This document shows, piece after piece, positions 18,744-53,102 of a DNA stretch of 64,000 nucleotides. Numbering within the stretch: position 1 is the stretch's first letter; each line of letters opens with the position of its first letter. The stretch is from NCBI RefSeq assembly GCF_040938485.1, contig NW_027272213.1, positions 372,001-436,000 of the forward strand. The letters run 5' to 3'. Both the position numbers and the translations under genes were made by a program. The stretch is from Diadema antillarum. Taxonomy: Eukaryota. Below the pieces are notes generated by a model. It was given only the letters and a program-made list of their open reading frames with translations. It did no database searches and was not told the origin of the DNA.

Positions 18744-18788
<45 letters not shown>

Positions 18789-24945: not shown

Positions 24946-25062
24946 AACAATAACAACTGATAACGTTTTGTGATGCTAATAATAATGTATCAAGTTTTTA
25001 TCGAAAAGGGATATACGCCATATTCGTTGATGCGATATAAATGTCATCCCTCCACTTATATA

Positions 25063-27923: not shown

Positions 27924-28104
27924 NNNNNNNNNNNNNNNNNNNNNNNNNNNNNNNNNNNNNNNNNNNNNNNNNNNNNNNNNNNNNNNNNNNNNNNNNNNNN
28001 NNNNNNNNNNNNNNNNNNNNNNNNNNNNNNNNNNNNNNNNNNNNNNNNNNNNNNNNNNNNNNNNNNNNNNNNNNNNNNNNNNNNNNNNNNNNNNNNNNNN
28101 NNNN
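27924..28104. other. N-gap (181 N)
   Basis: Seen directly. Confidence 0.98.
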
Positions 28105-29141
28105 TGAATCAGGTTTTGGAAAATCGCCAGGTTCTTACAACGCGATGAGAAACCGGTCGGTGTACAATAATAAGTCGGTGTATACACACACACACACACA
28201 CACACAGTTCTGGAGGAAAAACATATCAAGAATAAAACTGTCCGAGCCCTGCCACCTTTCAATGTATTCCGATTTACCAGAGTTGGACTTATAATATAGT
28301 AAAAATGGGACTCCGTTCTCAAGCCAGCAAGGTTATACAGAACGTTGTTATTGATTCAGCTGGGTCCTAATAATATACTTGTACTGCAGTTCGCCTATAC
28401 AGAGACTAAGGTGGCAACTACACCGGGGTACAAGGATGCCCATAGAGCATACAATCTTAATTTTAATTAGTGCATGTCTTCGAATGAATTGCATTTGTGT
28501 GAAAACAAACAAACAAACAAACAAACAAACAAACAAACAAACAAACAAACAAACAAACAAACATGTATTCATGAATTAGAACATAATTTCAGGACCTGTA
28601 TACGTAATAGTAGCAGTAAGACAGATAGCAACCATGAGACGTAAATTTACAATATAGCAGAGGAAGAATGAATCACAATCATCACGTGAACAGCGTGGCG
28701 CCTCGCACAATATATGGACCAATATAGCGACCATACGCCACGCCACATGTGAGGTGCTTTACGAAACCGTCTTAGATGCGATGTGTGCACCCCTCATCGC
28801 AGGGGTGAGCTCCTGACGGGGTCAATGTAGTTTGAAGGCACAAACCCTTGTTGGTCGTAAATAAATCTGTACAAAGCATCTCTTTCATATTTCCTCGATC
28901 CTCTGTAGGTGCTCTTGTTAGGAGAGACATCCAGGGTTTGTGCCTACAAACTATTGTCAATGGGGTCAAAGGGCGATCATTCCCCCCCCCCCTTCGATCC
29001 AGCGGAAAATTTTGAGGGCAGAACCCCGATTGTTGTCCTTTGTCAGTTTTTTTTTTGTCAGTTTTGCTTTCCATTTCTTATGAAAGTTAGAAAAAGCATG
29101 TATGTGGTGTGTGTGTGTGCGTGTGTGTGTGAGTGTGTGTG

Positions 29142-29175
<34 letters not shown>

Positions 29176-29364
29176 CACGCGTCGTATATCAAGGGAGAGG
29201 GCTATGGCTCCTGTCTGTGAGAGCAGTAGGTGCCTACTGTTGTCCAATGTTAGATTAAAATTATATAGCACAGCGAATGTCATATTGTTTGTGTTTTGGT
29301 TTCGTATTCCTAAGCCTTACAAACTACATTCTACCGACGATCAATGCTAAATAATGTACATGAT

Positions 29365-29533
29365 CAGGGGCGGATCCAGGAATTCTCTAAAGGGGGGTGG
29401 GGGGCGTGACTAATATTTCTGGTGCCACTTCCGGGTTTCATTTCATTTTTTTCTTTTTATTTCTTTTGTTTTTAACGAAAAATAAGGGGGGGGGGGCGTG
29501 CGCCGGTTGCGCCCCCCTCTGGATCCGCCACTG
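29365..29533. mobile_element. MITE with CAG(G/T)GGCGGATCC termini
   Basis: TIR CAGGGGCGGATCCAG / CTGGATCCGCCACTG; ATGAT on both sides; empty site in unit A (about 14450). Confidence 0.85.
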
Positions 29534-29773
29534 ATGATTGTTGGGGCCATGAGCGAAGAGGAAGAGGCTTGTTGACATGGGATTCAAAAGAAATTGCAAT
29601 ATTATTTAGGACCCATCTCAAAACCAGGAATAACTCGAGTTGTGGACTAACATTAGATAAACTCCCCAGTATGCAGAGTAATCTAGAGGAAAATAAAAAA
29701 ATGACACGCCTATTCATGATACTGAGAAGGGTCATGCAATGTCTCAGCTGAGCATGTGCAGTGGAATCATGTA

Positions 29774-29935
29774 CAGGGGCGGATCCAGGGAGGACCGCAA
29801 CCGGCGCACGCCCCCCTTTATTTTTTGTTGAAACAAAAGAAATAAAAAGAAAAAAATGGGGGAGGGGTGCGTGCGCCACCCCTTTAATTTTTGTAAACGT
29901 GCCCCCTCTTTACGGAATTCCTGGATCCGCCCCTG
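29774..29935. mobile_element. Second copy of the same MITE family, opposite orientation
   Basis: TIR CAGGGGCGGATCCAGG / CCTGGATCCGCCCCTG; flanks ATGTA / ACGTA; absent in unit A. Confidence 0.85.
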
Positions 29936-30265
29936 ACGTACGTGTACGTGTTTCTATCTATATGTGTATTACTTGATTGTTTATGTGCTATATTCAATAT
30001 TTCTGCATATCCCCATGCCATCATGAGGGTTGCCCATATAAAAACAAAACAAGAACGAACAAACAAACAAACAAACATTTGAGTCTTCTGCTCGAGTACT
30101 TTCCATAAATGATAGATTCTAAATAGGGTAATCATACTAGTACAAGTGTATTACTATCTTGGCTGCCAGGGGGCAGATAACAAGTACGTGTATGTAGTAT
30201 TATAGAATATAATGACATGAGATACATGCAAACATATACATATACAGTGTACATAATCATATACC

Positions 30266-30443
30266 NNNNNNNNNNNNNNNNNNNNNNNNNNNNNNNNNNN
30301 NNNNNNNNNNNNNNNNNNNNNNNNNNNNNNNNNNNNNNNNNNNNNNNNNNNNNNNNNNNNNNNNNNNNNNNNNNNNNNNNNNNNNNNNNNNNNNNNNNNN
30401 NNNNNNNNNNNNNNNNNNNNNNNNNNNNNNNNNNNNNNNNNNN
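30266..30443. other. N-gap (178 N), homologous to the AT-rich low-complexity tract at about 14990-15400
   Basis: Seen directly; flanks align to unit A. Confidence 0.95.
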
Positions 30444-31545
30444 CTAGGCTGAAAATTGCTATCCATATTCCATCCCTATTCAATTAAGTAAATCACTCTA
30501 CTCTCAATTCATCTTCCATTTGTAGAGATTATGAGGCAATACTTTACCACAAAAAACTGACAGCAGTAGATATTTCATCCAATGTAAATACAATGGATGC
30601 AAAAATTCCCAGTTACTGTCATTATTATAATTAATGGTATCATGCTACATACTGTATTATCATCAGTAGCAGTACTAGCATTATTATAATTCGACAGATC
30701 TTTGAGACTTTCCCTCCCCTGATTTCTTTGTTGTTGATTTTTCCCTCGACTTGTGAGCTAAAACCTTCCAATATAGTATGAGCCTTCAAAACTCTACCCC
30801 ATTCTGTACATACTTGCAAATGAGTGCAATATGCTAGCGTACTCTCAACTTGAAGCATTGTTCCTTTTGTTTTGTACTTCTGATATGACTCAAAACCTGT
30901 TATTTCCCAGCTTGCTTAGTCCACGTAATATTGTACCATTACATCATGTAGAATGTAGAACATAACTCCATATCGATAGGAAAGCAAAAAACTGAAGACT
31001 GCTGTGAAATGTTTGTACACCTTTAATTCAATGACAAGGAATACATACTAACAACTGATAAAAGATATACATGTACTACTAGCATCACTTGAAAGACTGA
31101 TATACCAATATTCTTGAAAATATCTTCATTTATTTGCCAAAGTACTGATTGTTCAATGCGTAACCATAACACACAAATATAAAGTCACATTAATCAATGT
31201 TTTTCTAGCATGATGGCTGAATTTTCATGAGGTGTTGAATTCAAATTCTCAAATGAAATGGAACCAGGAACTCAAACTGACTGAATTGGCACACGCTACA
31301 TGATGCAAGGCAACCATAATGTTTATTCATTGCAAGATATGTAACAAATGAACTTGACAGGACTGATACCTGGTAAAATATATCACCTACTATTATTAGA
31401 GTACTGTTGATGTTACAAACTTAAGCAAACTGTCTAGACATAAGTTTTTTATATAAACATGTAGTACTGTAATATCAGGGAGGCAGGACTCTATCTCCAT
31501 GGTAACATCACTTCCTGCGGGCTAACATCTCACAGAATACCAATA

Positions 31546-34500
31546 TCAATTTCTGCTGGCCAGGACCGGTTGGGAGTAGCGCCATCCATTTTGTAACTCT
31601 TGACTCAACTTCTTCACCAAGTCCTTATACTCGCTTTCATCTGCCACATTGTTGTCCTCCAGTGGGTCCACACCTCTGATGTAAAGCTCCCTCGCTTTCA
31701 CATCCGACCAATCAGCTTTGATCGTGGTGCCGTTGAATCCGACCCATTCTGTGTAGTGGTAGTCTTCAGTCAGCATGGAATAACCCATGACGGTGATGAT
31801 CTCTAGGTTTGGCAGGTCTGTGTAGACGCTTGGGGTCATCCCTGGCCGGGGATACTGGCTGAAGGTAGCATTCTTCCATCTGGAGAACTCTTGCTTGATC
31901 TCTTGTCTGCTGTGTGCCTTTACAAGGGGTGCAAAACTGTTCCCTTCTGCACAGAAGTCCACCTTGAATGGCTGTGGAGGGCAAACAGGTGGCACCTTCA
32001 GCCCAGCTAGCTCAGAAAGACTTGGAAACATGTCCACCAGTTCTACCAGGTCTTCGACCGCCACTCCAATATCACCCTTTAATTGTCTCTTTTGTTTTGT
32101 TGCAATTTTAGATGATAGCTTTGATTTCTCCCTTCTCTCCTTGGTAGCAAGCTCAAAGGGGTCTCTAAGAGGGAATTTCCTCTTTGAACGCTGATAGTTC
32201 GTGTCTGTCATCCCAGGAACGTGAACCATCAGAGGCACTCTTGTTGCCACTTCAAAGTTGGAATACTTGCACCATTCCCCATGCTCACCTAGTTGCCAAC
32301 CTGTGAGATTGTTGACAGCATGTAATCATATAAATGCTGAAATATAGGAATACATTGCTCATGTTAATTAATATTTCCATCAAACTTGGGAGAAAATCTC
32401 TGTGCATCATGAGCCAAAGCCAACCAACGTGTAGAGAGTTATTTATACAGTGGAAACTCGATATAACGAGATGGTCGGGACAGAATCATTTTCCTCGTTA
32501 TAGCCGATATCTCGTTATATCAGTAGGCATAAAAGAAGGCATAAAATAAAGACATTAATTTGCACATGTGGGACTACCCATCATATTTCAATCAATACTG
32601 ATAACTTGATATTGTGTGTGAGGGAATTACTCACCTTTATGGGTAAGAAGATGTTTTTCGCCAAGGAAATCCAATATCAAGAATGTGTTTCTTATTAATT
32701 GTAGATGTTTGAATTTGTAAATTTATATAGCTTGCGATTGTATCATGATTGTCTGTGGATTGGTATGTGGTTATCGTATGGGTGTGTGTTGTGTGGAAAG
32801 CTTGAATATGGTCTGCACAATGCTGTGTGTGTTTGTGACACATTCTGTATGTACATTATGACTGCGTGTGTGTGAAGACGGGGAATTCCCTAAGTAGAAG
32901 GCCAATCACAGCATCAGATTGCCTCACACCTGCTAGCGTCATGATGATGTCATGTATACATATGGCCGTCCCACCACATTTTCTGCATGTATCAGTGTGC
33001 GTGCACACACACACTTCACACGTACAATATGCAGTGCTAGCTGGAGTGCACTGAAGAAAATGATTATGTGTATACAAGACAGTTTTTGGCGCATCAAGCT
33101 TTACAATCTCGGAAGATGATAGCACAGGCGAAGTAAAGCGTTACCGAAGGCATTTTGCTTTACCTCGCTATAGCAGGTTTGATTTACTATGTTTTTCTTT
33201 GTTTGGAAGTCACAAAATTTATCTCGCTATAGCAGTTATTTCGTTATAGCCGATCTCGCTATAAGAGTAGCATTTTACATTGACTTGTGTGGAAGGAAAT
33301 TTGGGACTGAGAAAATTTCCTCGTTATAACCGATATCTCGTTATAGCAGTGTTCGTTATACCGAGTTTCCCCTGTATTGGGTGTCAGATCACTCTACACC
33401 AAGTGTAGAGCATATAGATCTGTGTAGATCTGTAATGTGTAGACACCAAGTGTAGATCTGTAATGCACATTTCTTGCCCATGGCTTTTATGAGTATGAAA
33501 ATGATGATCATTTTGTTTCTCTTAGCTTGAAAAAGAAATGCTATTTACCTGCTGAAAAATTTCGGTACTGACATAATTTCATCAATACAAGTACACTCAT
33601 ACCGACAGCTTGGATTTTGGCTATTATCTGAAGATGCACTCACCTTTCACCAATAGGCAGTGAACTTTTGTCAAAGCCTTAACTGTCACATATTTTACTT
33701 TCTGACATTTCAAGCCACAAATTCTTTGAGAATTTTTATTTTGTCATTGTTTATTCATTTGGCCAGTCATAGCCAATTTCTACAAATTTGTTGATAGGAA
33801 GTCCCAGAAATGCAGAATTATACCTTCAACTATGACCCACCCACTCTCTCTCAAACAGATAAGAATATCAAGATCATCATAACAAGTTTTCTGTGCTATT
33901 ACAGATCCACACAACATCACTACTTACAGTACACTCCCATTATAACGAACACGGTTACAATGAAACTCCGGTTAGTGAAAATTCACTCCGCAACAGTATA
34001 CACACTATGTATTCTTAATTGTTTATTTGTTCGGTTATAATGAAATTTCGATATAACAAAAGAAAACTGCCAGTCCCGAGGACTCCGTTATGACAGGAGT
34101 GTACTGTATCAAAAAATACACCCACAAACAATGAGACATGAATTTGTAATACACACAAGTATATTGTGCATATGAAAAACTTCAACTTGATGGCTTCCGT
34201 AAGTGTGAGAATTGAGAACAACAATATCTAAGTGCTAATTTTATGCATATAATCTCTTCAAAGCATTATAGTCTCACCATGGTCTCCCACAAAAGAGATG
34301 ATGGTGTTGTTGGCAAATCCAGCCTCTTCCAGACCTTGGAGAACTCGGCCCAACTCGTAGTCAACGAAGGTTGATGCAGCATAATAACTCTGTCTCATCA
34401 AAGCCTGCACAGAGGCAGAAAAGAATATTAAGTTATTGATGTTAAGATGGACACAGTTATGATTTTCTTGTGTTGTCAGCAATGGCATTCCTGAGCAGTT

Positions 34501-37500
34501 AGAAATGTAAACTGTATGAATTGTGAACTGTATGAAGCAATAATGCAAATATGCATCATATTAGACTTGACATAACGGAAACTGTCCTCTACTTGCATGC
34601 CTTTATAACTCTCCTAAGATATTAGAAAATACCCCCCCCCAAAAAAAACAAAAACACAAAAAACAAACAAACAAACAAACAAACAGCACAACAACAACAA
34701 CAGCAACAATGCACTCTCAAAGAACACTGAATTGATTACGCTATCAAATCGTGACAATATTACTGGTTTTTTTTTTCTATTTTTCTTGTTCATGTTGAGA
34801 AGCATGTATTGTGTGATATATCACCCTGGTAGCTCACATGAAGTAGTGTCCACATGCAGCCTATGGCTTATGGACAGCAGAGAACTGAGGCTGGCATTAG
34901 GGAGGACCACTCACATGGTGGTCATCTGGAATGAGACCGTACGGAAAGCTGAGGTTCATGGCTTTCATATCATCTCTCTGTCTGGCTGTGAAGAAGTCTT
35001 CCCAAGCCACGCTGGGCAGTTTGGCCGGAATCTGCCTGTTTGGGGCGATCTCCACAGATTCCAGGGGGTACAGGTCGCGGAACTCTTCGGGATACTTCCA
35101 GTTCAGGTGTGGCTTCCTGAAACCAACTGCCAGGAAGAAAGGCGAATCCCAGGTGGGTGAATCTGGTGAAGAATTTTTCCTGTAAGAGTCCAAATATTAA
35201 TCATCATTCAAACCTGAGCACACAAATACATGTACATATGTATGTAATGTTTTATTGTGCATCTTAGCATGAGAATGTTTACATGATATGCTACTGCTCA
35301 GTCTGTTGTTACACATAAACAATGGAACTATGTAAATTTGTATGAAAACTTTTTTTTTTTCACAATCTCACATATAGTGTAAATGACTAGATATTTGATT
35401 CACCACAACAGCAAAAATAGTTCTACCGGATAAATGCATCATACCACTTCAGCCTTTATGAACACTGTTATACTTGAGTATTAGTGAGAAGGTGATTAAC
35501 ATTTTTAGCTGTAAAATAGAGAGTGATAAAGAGAATGTTGAGCCTCACCTGGCAGCAGACAAGTTAGCCAGGATCTCCAAGGCTCTCTCAGTGGTCTGAA
35601 GATCTGGAAGGGAATGTTCAGGCATCCTAGACACGTTGACTGGACACACCACATTGTTGTGAAGTTTTCCATCTTCTGAGGGACACACCTATTATCAGAC
35701 AAATTAAAGGGCAATGATATTTGGCCGCAATAATTACAGAGCGTTTGTTGTGCATTATTTATGTACATGTGCGTGCCTCTGTGTGTGCATAAGGATTTAC
35801 AGATTAATAGGGACAAAAGATAGAACAGAGCACAAGTGTATCCTCAGATATAACCTACAACCATTTGTTTGCATCTTCTTCCTTGAATGATTATGAAACA
35901 ATGATTTAGTCTAATTCAAATAAAACAAACAAACAAACAAACAAACAAACAAACAAACAAACACACAAACAAACATATGTGCATATCCCGAGTTCAAGAA
36001 TGAATACATTTTATGTGTGGTTGCATTACTTTGTTTTCATAAGTTCTTTATTATATACATGTATAGCCTTCATTGGAAACATTTGCTTACCTTGGCATAC
36101 ACATACTTCTCTGTAGAAGCATGGTAGGGAGGAATAGACCAGCTGTATGGGAAGTCATCTGTTCCATTGGAAGCTACACCTGTATTTCCAGTGAAATCAA
36201 AGGATATCTTGACATTCCACACACAGACACTGCATTGGACAATGCATCTTATAAAGTTATATTGCACTTAATGGATTAGTAGCATGTATCTATGTGAAAT
36301 TAAATTTTCAGCAGAAATCATAAATGCTAGTTTGAAGCATATGTGCTGAGTAAACATCACTTGAATGATTTGTTAACAGTGATAGATCTATAAAGAATCA
36401 CTGCAATAAATGACATGTGAAAGTCTATTGATACGATATGTAATTCATGAGCTATTAGTATCATCATAGACAACAGTGACGGATCATGGGGGAGTGCACC
36501 GGATGCCCCCTTTTATTTTTTGTTAAAACAAAACAAAACAAAACAAAAATGGGGGGGCATATGCACCTCCACTTTAATTTTTTAAAGGTGTCCCCCTCCC
36601 CCCTTTTACAGAATTCCTGGAAACGCCCTTGTAGAAAGTAAGCTAAATTTGATAAGATGCATTATATCTTACAGACTTGGTATGGGGATACCATGCAATG
36701 GGAAAGCTAATCTGACTCAAATATATTCAAGCATCCCAGGAATAAATTGTGAATAACTTTATCACTGATCTCTATGTAATTACACAAGTAGCCAAAGAAC
36801 ACCAATGAGAGCATGCTTCCATGCACATATTCATGAACAGGCAAGTCTATTCCAACAGGCCGACAATGGCCATGGTTTTTTAATGTACAGATATTCAGGG
36901 GGGCATTTCATGAAGGAACTTGTCGGATAAAATATCAGACAAGTCAATTATATCCGACAAGTTTTGAGAAATTCTTTAGTCTGATTGGCTGATTTCTCTG
37001 AACTTGTCGGATATAAATGACTTGTCGGACATTTTATTCGACAAGTTCCTTCATGAAACGCCCCCCAGATGGCAGCGAAAGAAGACTGATTCAATCAGGC
37101 CAGCCTTATCTCTCCACACTACAAAGATTTTAACCCATTGAGGACGGACTGATTTTGCTACAACAGGGATTTCCCATAGACACCTGTCTGAGTACACTTG
37201 GGACTCGTCCTCAACGGTTCAAGAGAAAAAGACTGATTCGATAAATTGGCAGAAAACTTTTGTGTTTCATTTGGTTTGGGATGTCTCTACTTAGAGAAGC
37301 ACAGAAGACAATTTTCAAAACATTGAGACTTTGATTTACATGTAGGTAGTCACAATCCATTTGTGACTGCTGACTATGTCCACATGCTGAATCTGAGTTT
37401 CGAAAACAAAAACAACAACAAAACCCTTCCTAGTTTAATAGTAAATATACCTGGATGAAAAACCTTGCCAACTGATGCAGTAAAGTAACCATTTTCCTTG

Positions 37501-39382
37501 AAGTGTTGAGGGAGAGTGGTGTAGTTTCCTGCGAAGGTTCTCCAGTAGAAGCCAAAGTCATAGAGTTTGGTTGTGTCTGGTCTGCGTCCTGTCAAAAATG
37601 AGATTCGGCTTGGGCCACAGACAGCTTGCTGAAATTTAAAAAAAAAAACCACCCAAATGAAAAATAATCAGTTTGACAACCGATATCTCATCACTGTGCA
37701 TATCAGTTGCAATATGTATTTCCTGTGTACTGTAGGCCTATAATCCTACCTCCCCTCCCTCACCACCATAAAAAGAAAAATGACAATAAAAGAAAAAAAT
37801 GCAGATCAACAGACTGTATTCAAAAACTATGATCCACAAAAATCATGATAGACTTATTGTACATTGTATATACCCACCAATGCAAGTGGATTGAAAGTCA
37901 GCTTTTCTTTTTTTGTGTACCGAGAACTTTAATTTAGAGAAGCTTCCAAAGATCTTTATTTGATTGAGTGTGTGTTTGGGCATGCACTTCTTGACCTTCT
38001 GATTTAGTTCATCAAGCCATTTTTTTTTTAACCTGCCTATGATGGAGATGCTGTAATGCAGACAATATTTTTGATAGAAATGAATAAATATCTTCACCCC
38101 AGTTATACATGCAACACATTACCTGCACAAAGGCATTGTTGAAGACTGCAGATTGGGAAGCCAGTTGGTCAAGGTTTGGGGATATAATTGGACCACCATA
38201 GCAATTCAGCGATGCTCGTAGATCATCAGCAACTATGAACAGCACATTTGGTTTTGAGTTTGACGCTTCTCCTGGAAAAGCAATGAGAAACGTGTTTTAA
38301 CCATTTTTGCAAGATTGGTTAACAAACTTTAACTTCCTTAATAAAAAAAACACCCTTGGTATATTGAAGCATGGTTGCAGCAGCTTACACAATGTCATGT
38401 CAAAGAAAACACTCTGTCTCTGTCATATGAAATATGGTGGAGTACAACGTATCTGAGCAGAGCAACTAATTCGACATTCTAGAGCACTGCAACTTTATTT
38501 AAAGACCAAGGGGGAAAAAAAGCAAATCTCACTTTCAATATCTCATCTGATGCTTTAATATACAACAAATTTCATCAATTTTACTAGGGTCTACACCAAT
38601 TGTAGAAGTTCAGGACACCACCACAGCTCAGCCACACTGACATGACCACAATAGGGTAAAATTTACTGGTACATGTAGTTGATAGATGTGCAGGGGGGCG
38701 GATCCAGGAATTCGTGGTAAAGGGGGAAGGGGCGCAAAAAAAAAAAATTCTGGTGCCACTTCCAGGTTTAATCAGCTGACAAGCAAAAAAAAAAAAAAAG
38801 AAAAAAGAAAAAAGAAAAAGCCTCACATACTTTTTTTTGTGTCTTTTTTGTCAAGCGTCATTCTTTTAACTTTGTGCCAATAATCCAAGGAAATACTCTT
38901 CTTCCTGGTGGTGAGCAACCACAAAACAACTAGGCCTAGATCTCAGCCCCATCTAGTTTGTGTCACTCATGGTTTACTATTATTAGAACTAGATTTTCAA
39001 TATATGTCACTTTCAAATTTAAATTGTTGAATTGGATGTCTACGGGCCGGACGAATCAGTCAACATGGACTAAAAGGAGGTCGGCATATGTATATAAATT
39101 CATAAATAACCATCAATCATAGCTAGTACTAGGTAGTAGAGACTAGAGTAGTAAACATGGTAAATAGTAGGCAGCACGGTCATTTCCTGTTCCCTGTAGT
39201 TTGTGTCTTCCATAATATTTGGCTTTGCCTTTATACTGCCTTGGCTTTTAAGTTTTATCTCATTTTGCCGAGGGTAAATGAATAAATAAATCGTTACCTC
39301 TCCTGGTAAGTAACAGTATGAAAGGAATGACGAAGTACTGGTATCTTGAAAGGATCATCCTGTCCCTGGTTGCAGAAGACAT
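31546..39382 (-). CDS. IDS: Iduronate 2-sulfatase-like, copy C (complete, 8 coding exons, 595 aa)
   Basis: Exons (minus): 39382-39298 (85), 38271-38123 (149), 37628-37451 (178), 36179-36091 (89), 35688-35549 (140), 35179-34915 (265), 34404-34278 (127), 32300-31546 (755); total 1788 nt, all GT-AG and phase-consistent. N-terminal hydrophobic signal, [49 protein letters not shown]. Confidence 0.95.
32448..33374. mobile_element. pogo/Tigger-like non-autonomous element in the last intron of IDS-C
   Basis: TA-CAGTGGAAACTCG ... CGAGTTTCCCCTG-TA; repeated CTCGTTATA(A/G)C subterminal motifs. Confidence 0.8.
33927..34106. mobile_element. pogo-like MITE, CAGTGCACTCC family
   Basis: TA-CAGTACACTCC...GGAGTGTACTG-TA; related copies at 52793-53018 and 54290-54808. 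Confidence 0.8.
36474..36631. mobile_element. Degenerate copy of the 29365/29774 MITE family (another partial copy starts at 38691)
   Basis: CAGTGACGGATCA...TTCCTGGAAACGCCCTTG with the same internal layout. Confidence 0.6.
36899..37065. mobile_element. PIF/Harbinger-type MITE
   Basis: TIR GGGGGCATTTCATGAAGGAACTTGTCG / CGACAAGTTCCTTCATGAAACGCCCCC; 3-bp CAG target duplication on both sides. Confidence 0.85.
37134..37222. mobile_element. piggyBac-like MITE (inverted, truncated relative at about 56568-56642)
   Basis: TTAA-CCCATTGAGGACG ... CGTCCTCAACGGTTCAA. Confidence 0.7.
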
Positions 39383-39460
39383 TGTCCAGAGGAAGTGAAG
39401 CAAGAAGCTCAGCACTCAGCAAACGCACGTCGTTGCACCTTGGTTCGTGTTGCCAACGAT

Positions 39461-39518
39461 GTGTCACGTGACACTAGATGCATCATGTGACACGAATCTG
39501 AGTACACTGTCACGTGAT
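39461..39518. promoter_or_regulatory. Cluster of CLEAR/E-box motifs upstream of IDS-C, between IDS-C and IDS-D
   Basis: GTCACGTGAC at 39463-39472 (inside the 14-bp palindrome GTGTCACGTGACAC), TCATGTGAC at 39483-39491, GTCACGTGAT at 39509-39518; 80-136 bp from the IDS-C ATG. GTCACGTGAC is the known TFEB/MITF CLEAR consensus of lysosomal genes. Confidence 0.7.
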
Positions 39519-41250
39519 CGTACTCCCAGGTTCGGGCTGCAGCTACAGAGACAGAGGCGACGGTCCGGTCCGTGTTTGATAACTCCTTGGTGTTTAAAAG
39601 GTTGAAAGAAGGCACAGCTCGTGAGCCAGCCACCAACAGGGATCCGATCTGAAGGATGATATCACTAGTGGTGTCACTTCAGTCAGTAACTATCCGTTTA
39701 CGTTTGGCGTTTCTACACAGCCCAACCGTTAAGTTCTACTTCTAGAATCTAGTAAGTTTTAATTCCCACTCCCAGGCATGATTCCTCATGTAATTTTTTA
39801 TGTTATCTCGTTATTTTCTAGCTCCCTTGACCAATTGTTGACCGCCGTGTGCATTACTAAATTAGGTATGCAGCACTTAACTTAAAGTAATTTTAACCAT
39901 TCCAAAATTTATCATGATTTATATTCAGTATTAAATTATTTGTGTAATGTTACATTGTCATTGTGCCATTGAATTGTCACATTGATGATGCAGAAATCCA
40001 GTGGGGGCAGTGGCAGTGAATTGACCTTACAAATTACAATGAATGCAAAACATTTCATTTTGATGATCAGTGCAAACAAGAAGTTGTATAAGCTATTATT
40101 TACGTGAGGGTTTAATTTTTGCGAATTTTGCAAATCACAGTGGGATCGCGAATTTAACAACATGGGAACATGCCTCCATGCACTTTGTTGATAGAGCATT
40201 AACGTAAGCATCGATGTCAGTTCGCGAAAACAACATCTCGCGAAATGTCTGCGACCTTGTCATTCGCAAAAATTAAACGGTGTATTAAGTTAGCAGTAGC
40301 TGACAAATGGAAGGTTACACTGTTTGTAGGGCAGTTTAGAGTATGGTAACTAAAATTAGTTGGGAGGGCTGAGGGGGGATAAGGAAGTCTCAGATTTCCA
40401 GGAAGAGTGCCAGTATTGTCCAGACCAAACAAAAAAAGCGAGGGAAGGGAGGGGAAGTGTTAGTGCATTGATAATGATTAAAGGAGTGAGAATTTAATTA
40501 GATCTAATTATCAATACCATTGCTTATAAATTTGATGATATAATTCTAACAGAAGTTCAAAATAATGAAGTCCCCAAAGATATCATATATCAGAAAGAGT
40601 TGGTTTCCTTATGTCCCTCCACTTGTCTATACCACTAACCTATCCTTGTTAAATACAACTGTAGCTCACTCACAGATGCATGCACTCATACTAGTCATAG
40701 TCCCACGCCATTGGAAAGTGGTAGGGTGGGGGAGGGGAGACATAAGGAAGACTAATGTTTCAATGTGACACAGCAGAATTAATGGCAGTCAATGCATCAT
40801 GTGACATGATCATGACCTATCCAGTAAATTATTATGTAATTGAAATAAGAGCATACAGAAAAGGTGACTAAAGAGGATGAAATCATATGGAAAAATTTTC
40901 CAAACAGCATGCCATTTAACCACATGAAATGGAGGGTGTAGAGAGCTTAATGCATTGGTTACTGCGAGTGAATGCAAGATTCCCTATGACAGATGTTGGT
41001 TGGAACATGATTTTACATGGCCTGACCTTTGCATTGCTAACAAATGGTGCTTCTGGTGTTTTTGCAGCTCTGATTCACGAGTTTTACAGCCAAGGTGGGA
41101 TCACTAGACTTTAATACCCAGAGCCTATCAAGTGAACTGGAAATGGGACCCATGGTCATGAGTTGATGCTGATTGCTGTCAAAAGAAATTGAGTCCAGGA
41201 AACACCTTGATACTACTAGGCTGGTGGAACACAGATGTAGCCGCCCCAGT

Positions 41251-44200
41251 ATGCAGCTGTCACATTTTCTTGTCATTTTCGTGCTGCTTCTCATCACTAT
41301 CAGTAGGGGTAAGAAATTTATACACATAAATTTATGTCTCAGATCTCAAGAATGAAATGACATATTGTCAGTGAGATTAGACTGCAAGGATAGAAACTTA
41401 GTTCAACCTCTCAATTCCTCCTGCTTTAGTTTGCCTTGTGGGTTTGCCAGGGTGAAAATATGAGTTGAAACCCCAATGATGCTGTGCTCAGGACAGACAA
41501 GAACAATGTGTCACTGGCTCAAAAGTGGTGCAGAGCATGGTGCCACAGTAGCGTGGTGGGTCAGTTAATCACTACTTCTGTACAAAGTGGTGACTGGGCA
41601 GGTGTCTCGTGCTGTGCTATGATTAAGAACTGCAATCCAGGGGATGATTCTGCAACTGCAAGCATGGAATCATTTGATAACAAAGTTTTCTTGACTTTAT
41701 CAAGACTGTTGATTCAGGTATGCTTTGAAAGAGGGTTGGCAGATTTGCGGGGGTGATTTGCAGAGCCCTGGAAAAAAAAAATTGAGAAACTTTGAATGTG
41801 CTGATGTTTTACCCAAACAGGACAAAGTAGAGAAAAGTTTCTGTAGAGCAAGGATTCAAAAGTTCTTCCTCTCTCTCATTAATAGGGTCTGATTTATTCA
41901 CTATCTTACAGGAGATGCATCAAAACCAAATGTGCTGTTCATAGTTGCTGATGATCTACGAGCATCGCTGAATTGCTATGGTGGTCCGATTATATCCCCA
42001 AACCTTGACCAACTGGCTTCCCAATCTGCAGTCTTCAACAATGCCTTTGTGCAGGTAAAGTAATTATGATATTCTATCAAAATGTGATCCTGTAGAAGAG
42101 TAACAAATGATTGAATGCAATGATATTGAAACATGAGATACAAAGGAGATGTAGCTGGCATGCATCATAAAAAGGAGATGCAGCTGCATCATGCAACACC
42201 AGGATTATACTAAGAAAGCTGCATTCATATCTGCATCCATGATTCAGTTACTGTGGCAAGCAATGAGGATACAGAAAAGAGCTTTCTTGATTACCCACAA
42301 GCTGTGACATCAGTTGTATTGGACTTCTTGTTTATTAATTTGTATGGTACATGAGATGTTACCATTTTTCAGTTTCTTTTTTATTGTATCAAAATTTGCT
42401 TCAAGCCATTTCAGCAACTGAATAGCGTCTAAAAATAATAGTAAATGGAATCAATCCTTCACAAGTCTTCAGATAAATTCTTCCTTTTATGTACAGGTGT
42501 GTTTTGTTTTGTTTTGTTTTGTTTTGTTTTGTTTTGTTTTGTTTTGTTAGGGATGTCTTTGTATGTATTATGGGAAAGAGAAAATACTGCTTAATATGAC
42601 AGTTTATTTGCATGACAAAGATGCTGTTATCAGAATCATGCAGGGAATCCTGCAGGGAATAGTATAATACAGACATTCACATATTTATACATGTTTCACC
42701 CTATCTTATACTCCCTCCACTCTCCCATCTTCTTTTTGTTTTTCAGCAAGCTGTCTGTGGCCCAAGCCGAATCTCATTCTTGACAGGACGCAGACCAGAC
42801 ACAACCAAACTCTATGACTTTGGCTTCTACTGGAGAACCTTCGCAGGAAACTACACCACTCTGCCTCAACACTTCAAGGAAAATGGTTACTTTACTGCAT
42901 CAGTTGGCAAGGTTTTTCATCCAGGTATGATTACTGACACACAAGAAAATATAAGTCTTTTTGAAAAATAAAATGAAATCTCAGTGTCCACATACTCCAT
43001 ACTCTTCACTTTTATATACAAATCAAAAGCAGATCGTCACTGATACATAAATCAAATCTCCATGATACATGTAGTGAAATCAGTTTTGCTTAACAGTTTG
43101 AATTTCAACCTTGAAAACCAAATAAAAGTTTGGTGATAAGATTTTGGAAAAAGCTTCTACTTCAACACTATTTATTCTTTTGATTAATTAACATGTGCCA
43201 AACAAAAGCTTACCTAACCTGTGATAATGGTACATAATTCGACACATGATTTTCCATTAGTTTTTTATAATTGACATCAATATAACCCAGATGACAAGGA
43301 TGATTGCACATTTGAATTGGATGAATGTGTCAGTTTGCAAGAGTACTTGCCAGACATTGACATATCATACTTTGTTCATTCATTCATTCATTCATCCATC
43401 CATCCATCCATCCACTCATTCAATTGTTTCAATGTAGATGAAATACATCATTCTGTATGACATGTATGTGATTAGAATACCAAAAGTGAATTCCAATGGT
43501 AGCCTTTTGTTTGCTGTTATTGTTTCAGGTGTAGCTTCTAATGAAACAGATGACTACCCATACAGCTGGTCTATTCCTCCCTACCATGCTTCTACAGAGA
43601 AGTACATTTATGCCAAGGTAATGAGCAAATTCAGAATGACAGAGTGATAAACATATAAATAGGCCTGCAGTAACGTTTTTGTGTAGTGTCACCTTTTTTA
43701 AAGACGCAAAGTTACACATTGCTACCATAGCAGCCAAAGTTTAATGATAACGGTCCAATTTGTCCCTGCTATGACATGTGCAATGTAATTGAAGTATTTA
43801 ATACATTTTGTGGGAGACTTTTTTCTAACATATTACCATGATTTTGGACAGTAATTCAGCTGGAGACCATTTTAATCCACCACCTTGGCTTATTTTCGTA
43901 TGTGCAATAATAATGCATCATGCAGTGGTAGTAACTGACACAGCTGCTGAGTTGCACATACATGCACTGCATAGCATTTTACTGCTTGGTACTGTAATCA
44001 GGAAGAGAAAGAAAAATAAATCAATTCACAGGATATATTTGATGTAGTAGCATTCTTGTGTTGTTGCGTTAAGATTACTAACACAACAAAATCTTCTTGT
44101 GTAAAGCACTAAAAATCACTTTCACCTATTGTTGGGTAATACTGCAGACAATGATGAACAAAATAAAAATCAATTAACAAAATGGCACATTTTTCATTGG

Positions 44201-47200
44201 TATGCAGGGGTACCAAATATATACCACATCATATAATTCAACAAAATAGAATAATGCTCATCATGTTCCATATTAATGCATTGTCAGCAAGTTCTTAAGT
44301 CATGTCTTAATCCTTGTCAAGAATACCTTTTTATCATATCTATATTGCCTGTATCATTGTAGTCATTTAAAGGACAAGTTCACCTTCATAGACGTGTGGG
44401 TTGAGTGAATGCAGTAATATTAGTAGAACACATCAGTGAGAGTTTGAGGAAAATCGGACAATCCGTTCAAAAGTTATGAATTTTTGAAGTTTCTGCTCAG
44501 TCACAGCTGGATGAAAAGACTACTATAGCTTGTGATGTCACGTGAGTACAAAGATATAAAGAAAGAATAAAGAAAATTCAACATATTTCCATTTTTCTCG
44601 CATAACAAAAGAACACTCGACTTCTCTCTTTCAGAAGGCAGGGGGAATAATATTACCCTTAACATACGTCAGTAGCAAGTCGAAGAAATGTGTACTTTAT
44701 TCAAAAAGTAAAGTTTTGTGAAATTCTCCTTTTATTTTCCTTATATAGTTGTACGCATGTGACATCATACACTGTAGTAGTCTTCTCTTCCAGCAGTGAC
44801 TGCACAGATACTTTAAAAATTTATAACTTTTGAACGGATTGTCCAATTTTCCTCAAACTTTCACTGAAGTATTCTACTAATATTGCTGCATTCTCTCAAT
44901 CCTTATGTATATGAAGGTGGACTTGTCCTTTAATCTAAGGCATTCTTTTCATTTTATCATACAGAGTACAAGCAAAGCATTGTTGAGTTGTGTCCCTGCA
45001 CCCTTTTACAACACTGTACCTCCAAATATGAATACAGTTTATCACAACACACAGAGGCTCACACACCTTATATAATCTTGTGTCATGGCTGATCATCATT
45101 GCCCATTGATTTGTCTAATAACAGGTGTGTCCCTCAGAAGATGGAAAACTTCACAACAATGTGGTGTGTCCAGTCAACGTGTCCAAGATGCCCGAGCACT
45201 CTCTCCCAGATCTTCAGACCACTGAGAGAGCCTTGGAGATCCTGGCTAACTTGTCTGCTGCCAGGTGAGGTTCAACCTTCTCTTTGTCTCTCTCTTTTTT
45301 TCTTTTTTCTTTTTTTTTTTTAACAGCCAAAAACTTTTATAATTCACTCAGCAATACCCCGGACAGTTTGCATAACCAGAAAAACTGTGAGCTGTTAAGA
45401 TAAATCAAACATCAAATCATATTGTAAACTTTTTTTTTCTTTTTTTCTTTTTACAAGAGTGCAACAAGAGATAGATATACAAATTTGAAGAGCTTTGTGC
45501 ATCGTTGGAAAAGACTGAAAAATAATTCGTCATATATCTGCTCTTTAGTAAATTAAGATGCACTGTACTGTGAGCCACATGTGTAAATGATGGTAGTTAC
45601 AGCGGTGTTCAAATATATTTGTTTATCTTGTGGACTTTTGCAGAAAAGATTCCTCACCAGAATCACCCACCTGGGATTCGCCTTTCTTCCTGGCAGTTGG
45701 CTTCAGGAAGCCACACCTGAACTGGAAGTACCCCGAAGAGTTCCGTGACCTGTACCCCCTGGAATCTGTGGAGATCGCCCCAAACAGGCAGATTCCGGCC
45801 AAACTGCCCAGCGTGGCTTGGGCAGACTTCTTCACAACCAGACTAAGAGATGATATCAAAGCCATGAACCTCAGCTTTCCTTACGGTCTCATTCCAGATG
45901 ACTACCACGTGAGTGGGCCGTCTCTAATACTGGCCTCTGATCACTTTTTTTGGGCCTATGGCAATTACCCCCTGGGCAATTACCTGGGACTCTTCTCCTG
46001 ACCCTGACCTTAATCCTAAATCCTGATCCTAAACCTAACCCTAACCCTAATCTTTACTCTAACCTTATTACTAACCAGTATTTAGCGTGGGGTAATTGCC
46101 CTGATACGGAAAATGCTGTGTAAAAACAGCAAGCTGTTGTGTCAATGCAGTCAACCTATCTGTACCAGCTGCTTGTGGGAAGCTGCAAAAGTGGCTATTG
46201 GAGACAGGTGGCCACTATTCCATTGGTTGCTATAACAGTTTGATTATGCAATCAAATAGTGACTGTGGGATACAAATCTTGTGTCTGCTGGCTGTGTTAA
46301 ACAGGTTGCCGCCATATGCAGGGACTTAATCACTGTATTTCTTGTGGGAGAATTTTAGGTGACTGCATGAAGCAGGTGGCCACTAAAGACAGGTTTGACT
46401 GTATATACCAGTTAAGATGAAAACCTCAATCTTTCTCCCTACCGGTTCCATGACATTTGCTCCTGCGATGTAATTGCTCTCATGAAATATCTACACGCTA
46501 AGCCAACCATAAATTCTACCTACAAATGTAACCCTAACCCTAATTCCAATTCTCACACCAAACTAACCCTAAATCCTTGTCGAAAATAAGACCAGAGCTA
46601 TCGTCACAGGAGTAAATGTTGTGTCACTCTCCCTACCACATGATTCTTGTATTGTCCTCATACCTGTAGTCTAAGCCAGAACAGCCGGAAGACATTATTC
46701 AGAGGAGACCGCAAGATGAAAAGGAATGAAAAGAAAATAAGGAATATCAATAATTGCCAATCACAAGCCTTGTGGTGTATTGTAACAGTTTAAAGTCACA
46801 AACTTCTAAAACATGTGATCTTCAGTTTGTGGCAAGAATAGGTATTGATCGCTGAATTTAATGCAATTTTGACAAAGTGTATGCTTCAAAACATTCTGTT
46901 ATTGTGGCATCATACATATTGTATCATGTTCTGTGATTCAAAAGTCTCACTCCACTCACAGAAATAAAATGATTTTGTATTTATGGCTGTATGTGCATGA
47001 TTGTAATTCCATTGGATAATCTGTGTCAATGTCAATATAAAAATACAAAATCTTCAGTGCTACATGTGGAAACGAGCCTCACTTTTGCACTGCCATAAAT
47101 ATTTGCTACACACCAGGCTTTGATGAGACAGAGTTATTATTCTGCATCAACCTTCGTTGACTACGAGTTGGGCCGAGTCCTCCAAGGTTTGGAAGAGGCT

Positions 47201-48668
47201 GGATTTGCCAACAACACCATCATCTCATTTATAGGGGACCATGGTAAGGTTTAGTGACTGAAAATTTCCTTGTTAGAGAAAAAGATAGGAAAGCCACAGA
47301 AAGCTATTTAATACCCTACAATTTTTTTTTATCCTTGAATAGTTATGCCTGTAGTTTGTAAACTTCTAGTGTGTAGCAGTAGACTGCTACCTCTCTGGGT
47401 TATCCTTTTTCAATTTTATTTGATTTGATCAGAATCATATGCACAGAGCTAGCTCAGGAAGAAATTCCAAGCAGATGAATGAAAAGAAAATATGGATGCT
47501 GATTGTTCTCATGACATTCTAGAACATAATCGATAGCTTTATTAGAGAAGCTTAATGCAGATCTTTCTACCTGTTGGCAAAAGTGGTATGTACTTCGTCA
47601 AGTTTGTCATATTGATGTTATAACTTCAGGTAAAACTGAAATGTCAAGAGTTTAATCAAGAACTGGGAATCACATTATCTGTACATTTGCTGATTGTAAA
47701 ATTTAGTAAATGAAGGATTAAAAAAAAAAATTTTACTCCAAGGAAACAAAAAGTCAAAGAAAACAAAATTTAAAATCCAGGGTAAACAGAAATGCTCATT
47801 TGATAAATGGTAGATGAGGTGGAATTAAAAATTGCATGTTGCATTGTGATAGAGAGTGATTCTTAGGTTTGCAGTGCATTTTTAAGTCCTTGGAATTTTG
47901 TGATGTAATTGTTTTGCAGGGTACCAACTAGGAGAGCACGGAGAATGGAGTAAGTGTTCCAACTTTGAAGTGGCAACGAGAGTGCCTCTAATAGTGCACG
48001 TTCCTGGGATGACCGACACAAAGTTTCCACAGTTAAAGGCTAAATTTCCTCTCAGAGATCCTTTCCAACAGGCTTCCAAGAACATAAAGGAGAAATCAAA
48101 GCCAACATCTAAACTTCCAGTTGGTGCAAAGAGACGCTTAAAGGGTGATATTGGAGTGGCAGTTGAAGAGCTGGTAGAACTGGTGGACTTGTTTCCAAGT
48201 CTGTCTGAGCTGGCTGGGCTGAAGGTACCACCTGTTTGCCCTCCACAGCCATTCAAGGTGGACTTCTGTGCAGAGGGGAACAGTTTTGCACCCCTGGTAA
48301 AGGCACACAGCAGACAAGAGATCAAGCAAGAGTTTTCCAGATGGAAGAATGCTACCTTCAGCCAGTATCCCCGGCCAGGGACGACCCCGAGCGTCTACAC
48401 AGACCTGCCTAACCTAGAGATCATCACTGTCATGGGTTATTCCATGCTGACTGAAGACTACCACTACACAGAATGGGTCGGATTCAACGGCACCACGATC
48501 AAAGCTGATTGGTCGGATGTGAAAGCGAGGGAGCTTTACATCAGAGGCGTGGACCCACTGGAGGACAACAATGTGGCAGATGAAAGCGAGTATAAGGACT
48601 TGGTGCTGAAGTTGAGTCAAGAGTTACAAAATGGATGGCGCTACTCCCAGCCTGTCATGGCCAACTGA
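41251..48668 (+). CDS. IDS: Iduronate 2-sulfatase-like, copy D (complete, 8 coding exons, 582 aa)
   Basis: Exons: 41251-41308 (58; [20 protein letters not shown] signal), 41912-42054 (143), 42747-42924 (178), 43529-43617 (89), 45125-45264 (140), 45644-45908 (265), 47117-47243 (127), 47920-48668 (749); total 1749 nt, all GT-AG and phase-consistent. Confidence 0.95.
44371..44929. mobile_element. Intact Kolobok-type non-autonomous element in IDS-D intron 4
   Basis: TTAA-AGGACAAGTTCACCTTCAT ... ATGAAGGTGGACTTGTCCT-TTAA, with long subterminal inverted similarity. Confidence 0.88.

Positions 48669-53018: not shown

Positions 53019-53019
<1 letters not shown>

Positions 53020-53100
<81 letters not shown>
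53020..53100. repeat. (AC)n microsatellite, about 40 units
   Basis: Seen directly, at the right end of the MITE at 52793-53018. Confidence 0.95.

Positions 53101-53102
<2 letters not shown>

What the first reader, a model, noticed from the sequence alone, without database searches (positions are those of the whole stretch)
31546..48668. Exon-restricted concerted evolution between inverted paralogs IDS-C and IDS-D
By manual comparison, exon 3 differs at 2 of 178 nt and the core of exon 2 at 1 nt, including synonymous sites. Yet most introns diverge within a few bases of the splice sites, and exon 1 is unrelated. Old divergence survives as islands: seven differences in about 22 nt in exon 5 (TCT AGG ATG CCT GAA CAT TCC CTT vs TCC AAG ATG CCC GAG CAC TCT CTC) flanked by identical sequence, differences confined to the edges of the 89-bp exon, and the basic loop. 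This mosaic fits repeated short-tract gene conversion between fold-back arms, or mRNA/cDNA-templated conversion. It is an independent parallel to the human IDS/inverted IDSP1 recombination pair.
Basis: partly seen in the sequence, partly recalled or inferred. Interest (0 to 1): 0.75.

Follow-up and report, generated by a model that had tools for sequence, protein, structure and literature searches.

The report
Exon-only gene conversion between inverted paralogs
Two head-to-head iduronate-2-sulfatase genes of the sea urchin Diadema antillarum keep nearly identical coding exons while their introns have diverged almost beyond recognition, because short stretches of DNA are occasionally copied from one gene to the other; this is a clean new example of a known process.

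Summary
C (minus strand, 31546-38271) and D (plus strand, 41912-48668) are intact head-to-head IDS genes of Diadema antillarum. Their coding exons are 92-99% identical. Identity falls to chance within about 10-30 nt of most splice sites and right after the stop codon.

Controls rule out a simple recent duplication:
- Paralogs A/B (dS 0.086) and the second assembled haplotype have alignable introns at similar exon divergence.
- The D. setosum orthologs align intron by intron, C to C and D to D.
- The duplication is therefore roughly three times older than the species split.

In the homogenised exons, paralog dS (0.127-0.159) equals ortholog dS (0.134-0.148). In the first 230 nt of exon 8 it is 0.34-0.56.

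Twelve sites carry the same derived base in a C and a D allele (0.5-2.8 expected). Ten are still polymorphic, in patches under 120 bp. One patch includes intron bases, which favours a genomic rather than spliced-cDNA template.

Strict within-species clustering fails. Trees are by locus with a very short branch, or star-like, so conversion is slow and sporadic.

The exon-5 "old island" is private to one haplotype. Reads could not be checked. This is a new member of a known kind. The scan had not noted it on other DNA.

The parts
31546..32070 (-). Gene C, exon 8, nt 231 to stop: homogenised part
   Evidence: 21 differences from D in 525 nt; dS 0.08-0.20; GC3 0.60
32071..32300 (-). Gene C, exon 8, nt 1-230: unhomogenised segment including the basic loop
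   Evidence: 53 of 230 nt differ from D; dS 0.56, dN 0.21. Site patterns: 31 by locus, 0 by species. GC3 0.43
34278..34404 (-). Gene C exon 7
   Evidence: 127 nt, AG/GT bounded, 7 differences from D
34915..35179 (-). Gene C exon 6
   Evidence: 265 nt, 15 differences from D; old fixed differences lie in its 3' third
35001..35091 (-). Polymorphic D-to-C conversion patch in exon 6 of the window's C allele (minimum 35019-35068)
   Evidence: At exon positions 112, 139 and 161 the window's C allele equals both D alleles. The other C allele and D. setosum C carry the other base. Positions 91-161 are identical to D, against 7 differences in the other C allele
35549..35688 (-). Gene C exon 5
   Evidence: 140 nt; 7 differences from D, all at exon positions 60-81
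36091..36179 (-). Gene C exon 4
   Evidence: 89 nt; differences from D confined to the edges. On the other haplotype C and D share derived bases at positions 53 and 56
37451..37628 (-). Gene C exon 3 (holds the sulfatase Cys-x-Pro-x-Arg motif)
   Evidence: 178 nt, 2 differences from D; Pfam Sulfatase
38123..38271 (-). Gene C exon 2
   Evidence: 149 nt; the core differs from D at 1 nt, and the 5' edge has a 6-nt indel
39298..39382 (-). Gene C exon 1, coding part (signal peptide)
   Evidence: Matches residues 1-29 of RefSeq model P0103 (XP_071477900.1) exactly; no significant nucleotide similarity to D exon 1
38272..41911 (.). Head-to-head spacer holding both exon 1s and both intron 1s; no inverted symmetry
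   Evidence: No inverted match in self-BLAST. Collinear in the second haplotype and in D. setosum, so no inversion.
41251..41308 (+). Gene D exon 1, coding part (signal peptide), predicted
   Evidence: ORF, phase-1 donor and hydrophobic core. The same first exon is used in the models of the other haplotype (P0219) and of D. setosum (P0217). The RefSeq model of this copy (P0215) instead starts at 39459-39569
41912..42054 (+). Gene D exon 2
42747..42924 (+). Gene D exon 3
43529..43617 (+). Gene D exon 4
45113..45119 (+). Intron bases of C type in the window's D allele (positions -12 to -6 of intron 4)
   Evidence: At 4 sites in 7 nt the window's D allele carries the C-type base. The other D allele and D. 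setosum D agree on the D type. Over the last 17 nt it is 14/17 identical to C and 11/17 to its own allele
45125..45264 (+). Gene D exon 5
45182..45205 (+).
   Evidence: Four of the seven differences (exon positions 62, 69, 75, 78) are private to this D haplotype. Two are lineage-specific substitutions, one in D. antillarum C and one in D. One is private to the window's C allele
45644..45908 (+). Gene D exon 6
47117..47243 (+). Gene D exon 7
47920..48149 (+). Gene D, exon 8, nt 1-230: unhomogenised segment
48150..48668 (+). Gene D, exon 8, nt 231 to stop: homogenised part
   Evidence: best solved-structure match is human iduronate-2-sulfatase, E 6e-46

Best explanation
C and D are two intact iduronate-2-sulfatase paralogs of Diadema antillarum, arranged head to head.

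The duplication is old. It happened roughly three times longer ago than the split from D. setosum, which has the same pair. Since then the introns, UTRs, exon 1 and a poorly constrained loop in exon 8 have diverged freely.

The constrained coding exons have been kept alike by occasional short-tract interlocus gene conversion, templated by the partner's genomic DNA. Tracts run from tens of bp to about 100 bp.

The restriction to exons is mechanical (inferred). Only in exons has purifying selection kept out indels and preserved enough uninterrupted homology for strand invasion and heteroduplex formation. Tracts therefore start and end inside exons and leak at most a few tens of nt into introns.

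The rate is low. About one fifth of the substitutions that arose in the D. antillarum lineage have been copied to the partner. The pair therefore sits near a mutation-conversion balance, with paralog dS about equal to ortholog dS, and does not show textbook by-species clustering.

Most detectable recent events run from D to C and are still polymorphic.

Shown: the divergence contrasts, the orthology of the introns, the excess of shared derived sites, the patches, and the intron bases in one patch. Inferred: the homology-limited mechanism, the direction of transfer and the steady-state reading.
For: 1. Gene identity: Pfam Sulfatase and SGSH_C, and human IDS structures. Gene C equals RefSeq XP_071477900.1 of D. 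antillarum.

2. Exon/intron contrast. C-D dS is 0.174 overall and 0.05 in exons 2-3. The introns give no alignment beyond 30-36 nt flanks.

3. Internal controls:
- A-B paralogs have dS 0.086 and about 10 of 11.8 kb aligned at 69-95%.
- The C alleles have dS 0.10 and introns aligned at z=41-223.
- Orthologs have dS 0.134-0.148 and introns aligned at 78-93%.

4. A/B versus C/D dS is saturated, so there is no general synonymous constraint.

5. Introns assign orthology C to C and D to D across species. Intron 5 groups by locus, with p about 0.39 between loci and 0.14-0.24 between orthologs.

6. Homogenised exons: paralog dS is 0.127 in D. antillarum and 0.159 in D. setosum. Exon 8 nt 1-230: paralog dS 0.34-0.56 against ortholog dS 0.2.

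7. Trees: the C/D internal branch is 0.25 in exon 8 nt 1-230 and 0.014 in the other exons.

8. Twelve sites where both D. setosum genes agree carry the same derived base in at least one C and one D allele of D. antillarum. Expected by chance 0.5-2.8, P<=3e-5. There are none among 16 derived sites in exon 8 nt 1-230.

9. Patch sizes are under 120 bp.

10. Intron bases of C type occur in one D allele.

11. GC3 is 0.60 in the homogenised part of exon 8 and 0.41-0.43 in the unhomogenised part.

12. PMC13511894 states that this 1.75-Gb assembly retains both haplotypes.
Against: - Strict concerted evolution is not seen. Locus-supporting sites (17) outnumber species-supporting sites (8), against 4 of the third pattern. 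The excess of 8 over 4 is not significant on its own.
- The ML tree of the homogenised exons still groups by locus.
- Ten of the twelve shared derived sites rest on differences between two haplotype contigs of an assembly polished with about 9x short reads by Racon.
- The enrichment of old differences at exon edges expected from homology-limited tracts is only marginal (P about 0.05).
- The GC3 contrast may reflect the amino-acid composition of the loop.
- Ancestral polymorphism shared between the paralogs could account for some shared sites, although it would itself require earlier conversion.
Confidence: 0.75

Rival explanations
1. Homogenisation is templated by spliced transcripts (cDNA, or RNA-templated repair), which would by construction copy exons only.
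For: The step in identity lies within a few nt of most splice junctions. The same argument (dS below intron divergence) has been used for fungal ribosomal-protein paralogs (bioRxiv 10.1101/751792).
Against: - One patch in a D allele carries intron bases of C type, and the first 16 nt of intron 5 are a mosaic of C and D types across species.
- The 3' UTR and exon 1 are not homogenised, and similarity ends at the stop codon.
- The 5' exons, not the 3' exons, are the most alike.
- All six introns are retained in all six gene copies.
- Part of exon 8 is untouched.
- No patch is seen crossing an exon-exon junction.
Confidence: 0.08
2. There is no conversion: the duplication is old and the exon similarity is purifying selection, including selection on synonymous sites.
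For: dN/dS is 0.24, and both genes are intact in all copies. Ortholog dS (0.14) is somewhat below ortholog intron K (0.12-0.3).
Against: - A/B versus C/D dS is saturated.
- Within one exon, dS is 0.56 against 0.08-0.12.
- Paralog dS equals ortholog dS although intron 5 is 2.5-3 times more diverged between paralogs than between orthologs.
- Twelve shared derived sites against 0.5-2.8 expected.
Confidence: 0.06
3. This is simply a recent duplication whose introns were scrambled by fast indel and transposon turnover.
For: Intron turnover is fast here. Allelic intron lengths differ greatly (D intron 4 is 1507 against 6199 nt; C intron 7 is 1977 against 879 nt). D. setosum C intron 2 holds a retrotransposon-like ORF.
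Against: - The head-to-head pair, with the same locus-specific introns, exists in D. setosum, so the introns were already different before the species split.
- Orthologous introns still align at 78-93% at the same exon dS.
- Nothing alignable remains between C and D in introns 2, 3 and 7 (z<=2.2).
Confidence: 0.03
4. The pattern is an assembly or polishing artefact: exon sequence was exchanged among the four near-identical copies during short-read polishing of an uncollapsed diploid assembly.
For: The assembly was Racon-polished with about 9x 2x150 reads and keeps both haplotypes. The patches are shorter than a read.
Against: - Polishing cannot create 92-99% identity from diverged sequence.
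- The same exon/intron contrast is present in the independently made D. setosum assembly (paralog dS 0.159) and in both haplotype contigs.
- A read carrying three D-type bases would map better to D than to an unconverted C.
- A run from another sample and another study holds 60% of the words of the central 5.6 kb.
Confidence: 0.05

Closest known systems
Interlocus (ectopic) gene conversion between adjacent paralogs, detected mainly in exons (reviewed for Caenorhabditis in PMC3966223; theory in PMC3924837)
   Same: The paralogs are close together and inverted. Divergence is a mosaic. Variants are shared between the paralogs and within-locus diversity is raised. Tracts are short. The review states that conversion is usually reported for exonic regions, because introns diverge too fast to meet the homology threshold.
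   Different: This is a seven-exon gene in which every intron has diverged almost beyond alignment while nearly every exon is kept alike. The rate is so low that trees are star-like rather than by species.
Long-lasting concerted evolution of mammalian gene pairs such as BMP8A/B, DDX19A/B and TUBG1/2 (PMC2720389)
   Same: The duplication is older than the speciation events compared. Only part of the gene is homogenised. GC3 is higher in the homogenised part. BMP8A/B is also an inverted pair.
   Different: In those pairs the converted fragments span exons and the introns between them (over 97% identity across exon-intron-exon), and the paralogs cluster within species. Here introns are excluded and by-species clustering is absent.
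Coding-sequence-only homogenisation of fungal ribosomal-protein paralogs, attributed to cDNA donors (bioRxiv 10.1101/751792)
   Same: dS between the paralogs is lower than intron and flank divergence.
   Different: Here intron bases were transferred in at least one event, the UTRs are excluded, no intron has been lost and the genes are not known to be highly expressed. A genomic template fits better.
Human IDS / IDSP1 inverted pair (PMC11402328)
   Same: An IDS gene has an inverted IDS-derived copy within about 20 kb, and the two recombine.
   Different: The human partner is a 1.4-kb pseudogene. Its homology includes introns 2, 3 and 7, and the known outcome is a pathogenic inversion, mostly through the intron 7 homology. 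In Diadema both genes are intact, homology is exonic, the outcome is conversion, and no inversion is seen in three haplotypes. The two duplications are independent.
Islands of divergence persisting under gene conversion, as in GOT1 paralogs of Tigriopus californicus (PMC3728101)
   Same: Regions that escape conversion stand out as diverged islands within otherwise similar paralogs (abstract seen).
   Different: I did not read that paper beyond its abstract. Here the main island (exon 8 nt 1-230) has high dN and looks relaxed or functionally diverged, and the small exon-5 island is a single-haplotype variant.

Membership tests
Iduronate-2-sulfatase (sulfatase superfamily) | Sulfatase domain and C-terminal SGSH_C-like subdomain | tested here: met
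   PF00884 on exons 2, 3 and 6 and PF16347 on exon 8, searched exon by exon
Iduronate-2-sulfatase (sulfatase superfamily) | Closest solved structure is IDS | tested here: met
   Exon 8 against 5fql/6ioz, E 6e-46. RefSeq names both genes iduronate 2-sulfatase-like
Iduronate-2-sulfatase (sulfatase superfamily) | Cys-x-Pro-x-Arg formylglycine motif and intact reading frame | tested here: met
   The motif is present in exon 3 of all six copies, and there are no stops in exons 2-8. Enzyme activity was not tested
Concerted evolution by interlocus gene conversion | Paralog synonymous divergence far below the neutral divergence of linked non-coding sequence | tested here: met
   dS is 0.127-0.159, against intron 5 p about 0.39 and the other introns unalignable. 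Controls were A/B, the alleles and the orthologs
Concerted evolution by interlocus gene conversion | Mosaic, significantly clustered differences | tested here: met
   Runs test P=0.005, block variance P=0.002. dS is 0.56 against 0.08-0.12 within exon 8
Concerted evolution by interlocus gene conversion | Derived variants shared between the paralogs beyond chance | tested here: met
   12 observed against 0.5-2.8 expected, P<=3e-5. Caveat: reads were not checked
Concerted evolution by interlocus gene conversion | Paralogs within a species closer than orthologs between species (by-species clustering) | tested here: not met
   dS is 0.127 against 0.134-0.148, which is equal. Site patterns are 17 by locus, 8 by species, 4 other. 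The tree is by locus with a branch of 0.014, and exons 2-5 are star-like
cDNA/RNA-templated gene conversion | No intron bases are ever transferred | tested here: not met
   C-type bases at positions -12 to -6 of intron 4 in one D allele, and a mosaic first 16 nt of intron 5
cDNA/RNA-templated gene conversion | UTRs homogenised, 3' bias, occasional intron loss | tested here: not met
   The 3' UTR and exon 1 are unrelated, exons 2-3 are the most alike, and all introns are kept
IDS/IDSP1-type inversion-prone pair | Partner is a truncated pseudogene with intronic homology that mediates inversion | tested here: not met
   Both genes are complete, homology is exonic, and the spacer is collinear in the two haplotypes and in D. 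setosum

The most novel reading that the evidence does not exclude
Part of the exon homogenisation is templated by spliced transcripts (RNA or cDNA) in the sea-urchin germline, alongside the genomic-DNA events. This would explain why the step in identity sits within a few nucleotides of most splice junctions.
Probability: 0.08. Interest if true: 0.7.

Novelty: new member of a known kind. Interest (0 to 1): 0.35.

Why it matters
The locus is an unusually clean natural case of how far interlocus gene conversion can act on short homology. Exons of 89-265 nt are embedded in unrelated introns, yet they are kept within a few percent of each other for several times the age of a species split.

Conversion patches still segregate between the two haplotypes of a single animal. 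Tract length, direction bias, minimal homology and any mutagenic side effects in an echinoderm germline could therefore be measured by long-read amplicon sequencing of a few individuals and congeners.

It also carries a practical warning. Trees built from the coding sequence would greatly underestimate the age of this duplication.

It does not reveal a new mechanism.

Tried and rejected
No reads were laid. Those 60 bases were sent to no search tool afterwards. They were part of whole-region local alignments inside my scripts.
- Exon-8 word search for close relatives gave nothing above 63% identity, because full-length proteins fall outside the length window. A second search with a database protein (P0003) found the RefSeq models.
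- Third-donor idea for the exon-5 island: the genome has no other close paralog. Exon 5 of the other copies is at most 67% identical at the protein level, and A/B do not carry the island.
- Edge-effect test for old differences was only marginal.
- A run-of-identity (GENECONV-like) argument for the exon-6 patch was judged too weak on its own. It was replaced by the polarised shared-derived-site count.
- Exon 1 homology: the best local alignment falls at the donor site but is not significant (P=0.26).
Searches were made exon by exon by reference, or with database proteins. Exon alignments were concatenated only inside scripts, for counts and trees.
- The N runs in the A/B part of the window were not looked up.
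- The retrotransposon-like ORF in a D. setosum intron was only noted.
- The big representative search, structure prediction and the atlas were not needed.
Full report
WHAT IS THERE. The window holds four iduronate-2-sulfatase (IDS) genes:
- A: minus strand, 4050-10378
- B: minus strand, 15877-24762
- C: minus strand, 31546-38271
- D: plus strand, 41912-48668

Exon-by-exon searches give Pfam Sulfatase and SGSH_C, and human IDS as the best solved structure. C and D lie head to head around a 3.6-kb spacer. Exons 2-8 have canonical GT-AG introns at identical positions.

Gene C is identical to RefSeq XP_071477900.1 of Diadema antillarum.

Self-BLAST finds seven inverted islands that are exons 2-8. 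Differences between C and D are:
- exon 2: 3 of 143, plus a 6-nt indel at the edge
- exon 3: 2 of 178
- exon 4: 6 of 89
- exon 5: 7 of 140
- exon 6: 15 of 265
- exon 7: 7 of 127
- exon 8: 53 of the first 230 nt and 21 of the last 525 nt

Anchored at the junctions, intron identity is 0.82 at nt 1-5, 0.49 at nt 6-10 and at chance beyond about 30-40 nt. Exon identity stays near 0.9.

Sensitive searches intron by intron find only 30-36 nt next to exon 5 and weak collinear hits in intron 5. Global alignments give z<=2.2 for introns 2, 3 and 7. Similarity stops at the stop codon. The two first exons show no significant similarity. Synonymous differences are clustered.

IT IS NOT A SIMPLE RECENT DUPLICATION. 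C-D dS is 0.174 overall and 0.05 in exons 2-3. Three controls show what introns look like at such divergence:
- A-B: dS 0.086, about 10 of 11.8 kb aligned at 69-95%.
- The two C alleles: dS 0.10, introns aligned at z=41-223.
- The orthologs in D. setosum: dS 0.134-0.148, introns aligned at 78-93%.

A/B against C/D is saturated at synonymous sites, so there is no general synonymous constraint.

SECOND HAPLOTYPE. The genome search found the whole cluster a second time, on contig C707. It is collinear and 80-99.6% identical. PMC13511894 states that this 1.75-Gb assembly retains both haplotypes of one animal, with 84.4% of BUSCO genes duplicated, a haploid size of about 703 Mb and heterozygosity of 2.52%. 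I therefore treat C707 as the other haplotype. The exon/intron contrast is the same there.

CROSS-SPECIES TEST. The 90% cluster of gene C contains two D. setosum proteins. Their genes are also adjacent and head to head.

Introns assign orthology unambiguously, C to C and D to D. In D. setosum, C and D also align only at the exons, plus intron 5 at about 75% within one long hit. The duplication therefore predates the species split.

Intron 5 gives p about 0.39 between loci and 0.14-0.24 between orthologs. Exon 8 nt 1-230 gives paralog dS 0.34-0.56 and ortholog dS 0.2. Both suggest a duplication roughly three times older than the split (inference).

In the remaining exons:
- Paralog dS (0.127 in D. 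antillarum, 0.159 in D. setosum) equals ortholog dS.
- Four-taxon site patterns are 31:0:0 (locus:species:other) in exon 8 nt 1-230 and 17:8:4 elsewhere.
- ML trees group by locus everywhere, but the C/D internal branch is 0.25 in exon 8 nt 1-230 and 0.014 in the other exons. Exons 2-5 are star-like.

The exons were, however, within about 1% of each other around the time of speciation, when the introns were already very different.

DIRECT SIGNS OF CONVERSION. I took sites where both D. setosum genes agree as ancestral. At twelve such sites in the homogenised exons, the same derived base occurs in at least one C and one D allele of D. antillarum. Parallel mutation predicts 0.5-2.8 (P<=3e-5). 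There are none among the 16 derived sites of exon 8 nt 1-230.

Ten of the twelve are polymorphic. Usually D is fixed and one C allele carries the base, which suggests transfer from D to C. This fits the higher allelic dS of C (0.10) than of D (0.044).

The clearest patch is in exon 6. The window's C allele is identical to D over positions 91-161, where the other C allele differs at seven sites. The bounds are 50-91 bp. The other patches are under 120 bp. On the second haplotype, C and D share two derived bases 3 nt apart in exon 4.

TEMPLATE. In the window's D allele, four sites at positions -12 to -6 of intron 4 carry the C-type base, while the other D allele and D. setosum D agree on the D type. 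The first 16 nt of intron 5 are a mosaic of C and D types across the six copies. A spliced cDNA cannot supply intron bases.

In addition, the UTRs and exon 1 are not homogenised, the 5' exons are the most alike, and no intron has been lost. I therefore favour genomic DNA as the template. The exon restriction would then be a consequence of homology surviving only where selection forbids indels. The review PMC3966223 states this explanation in general terms.

RATE (rough inference). About 12 of 60 substitutions derived in the D. antillarum lineage have been copied to the partner. With a per-site conversion probability of about 0.4 per species-split time, and a synonymous rate of 0.07 per lineage over that time, the mutation-conversion balance predicts dS of about 0.17. 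That is close to the observed 0.13-0.16. It also predicts about ten old differences surviving in both species, against 14-17 observed. No burst of conversion is needed.

- The exon-5 island is not a fixed relic. Four of its seven differences are private to the window's D haplotype. They may be an unconverted old allele that is still segregating: at the one amino-acid site the window's D allele shares Lys with A/B. They may instead be a repair-associated mutation cluster next to the converted intron flank. I cannot tell which.
- The human IDS/IDSP1 parallel is superficial.

CAVEATS.
- The assembly was Racon-polished with about 9x short reads. This could in principle blur near-identical copies. 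It cannot explain multi-site patches, and it cannot explain the cross-species result, which also rests on an independent assembly.
They were included only in local whole-region alignments in scripts.
Exons were searched by reference, and full-length comparisons used database proteins.

FAMILY CONTEXT. A protein tree places C/D as a Diadema-only pair on a long stem among five echinoid IDS lineages. A/B belong to a different lineage that has camarodont orthologs.

VERDICT. This is a well-documented new example of homology-limited, exon-confined interlocus gene conversion. It is not a new mechanism.

Noticed in passing
window 4050-48668; G000:C1325 344208-420665; C707; C1348: The IDS family is expanded. 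At least six IDS-like genes lie in a row on this contig (two more upstream of the window) and there is a further locus elsewhere. The protein tree shows five echinoid IDS lineages, four of them with Strongylocentrotus or Lytechinus orthologs. The C/D lineage is seen only in Diadema among the proteins sampled.
   Followed up: partly
window 6577-6990 and 17907-18377 (minus strand): Genes A and B read straight through where C and D have intron 5, so that intron is absent in A/B. B carries an extra in-frame stretch of about 19 codons there. Intron 5 is also the only C/D intron that is still alignable and of conserved length (360-379 nt in five of six copies).
   Followed up: partly
window 3809-15638 versus 15636-30646: The tandem pair A/B is itself a mosaic, from 69% to 95% identity. 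The most similar block (9022-10386, 95%) spans exon 3, intron 2 and exon 2. In that pair, homogenisation or recent duplication includes introns, unlike in C/D.
   Followed up: no
window 32301-35548 (C introns 5-7) versus C707: The two C haplotypes are unusually diverged here. Intron 5 has p=0.24 between the alleles, more than between the other allele and D. setosum C (0.14). Introns 6 and 7 are at 0.11-0.13. The genome-wide heterozygosity is 2.5% and D introns are at 2.3%. This may be deep or trans-specific polymorphism, or something else.
   Followed up: no
window 45109-45201: The window's D allele has six private changes within about 95 nt: two in the last 8 nt of intron 4 and four in exon 5. 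They lie directly next to the intron bases that look converted from C. This may be mutagenesis linked to the repair event, or an old allele.
   Followed up: partly
window 39459-39569 (+) and 39298-39382 (-): The RefSeq model of this D copy (P0215) starts with a first exon that has no signal peptide. It lies only 77 nt from C's first exon, on the other strand. The models of the other haplotype and of D. setosum use the signal-peptide exon at 41251-41308. This is either an alternative first exon from a shared bidirectional promoter or a mis-annotation.
   Followed up: no
window 44367-44933; also 7108-7282, 18909-19325; 36895-37069: Fold-back, MITE-like inverted repeats lie inside introns (230-nt arms at 82% in D intron 4, with related copies in A and B introns; a 78-nt pair in C intron 3). 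Large intron length differences between the haplotypes and a 1079-residue retrotransposon-like ORF in D. setosum C intron 2 show fast intron turnover.
   Followed up: no
window 29083-29186 and 52676-53124: Short tandem-repeat-like arrays match each other in inverted orientation on either side of the C/D pair, about 24 kb apart. This is probably simple repeat sequence.
   Followed up: no
   Followed up: no
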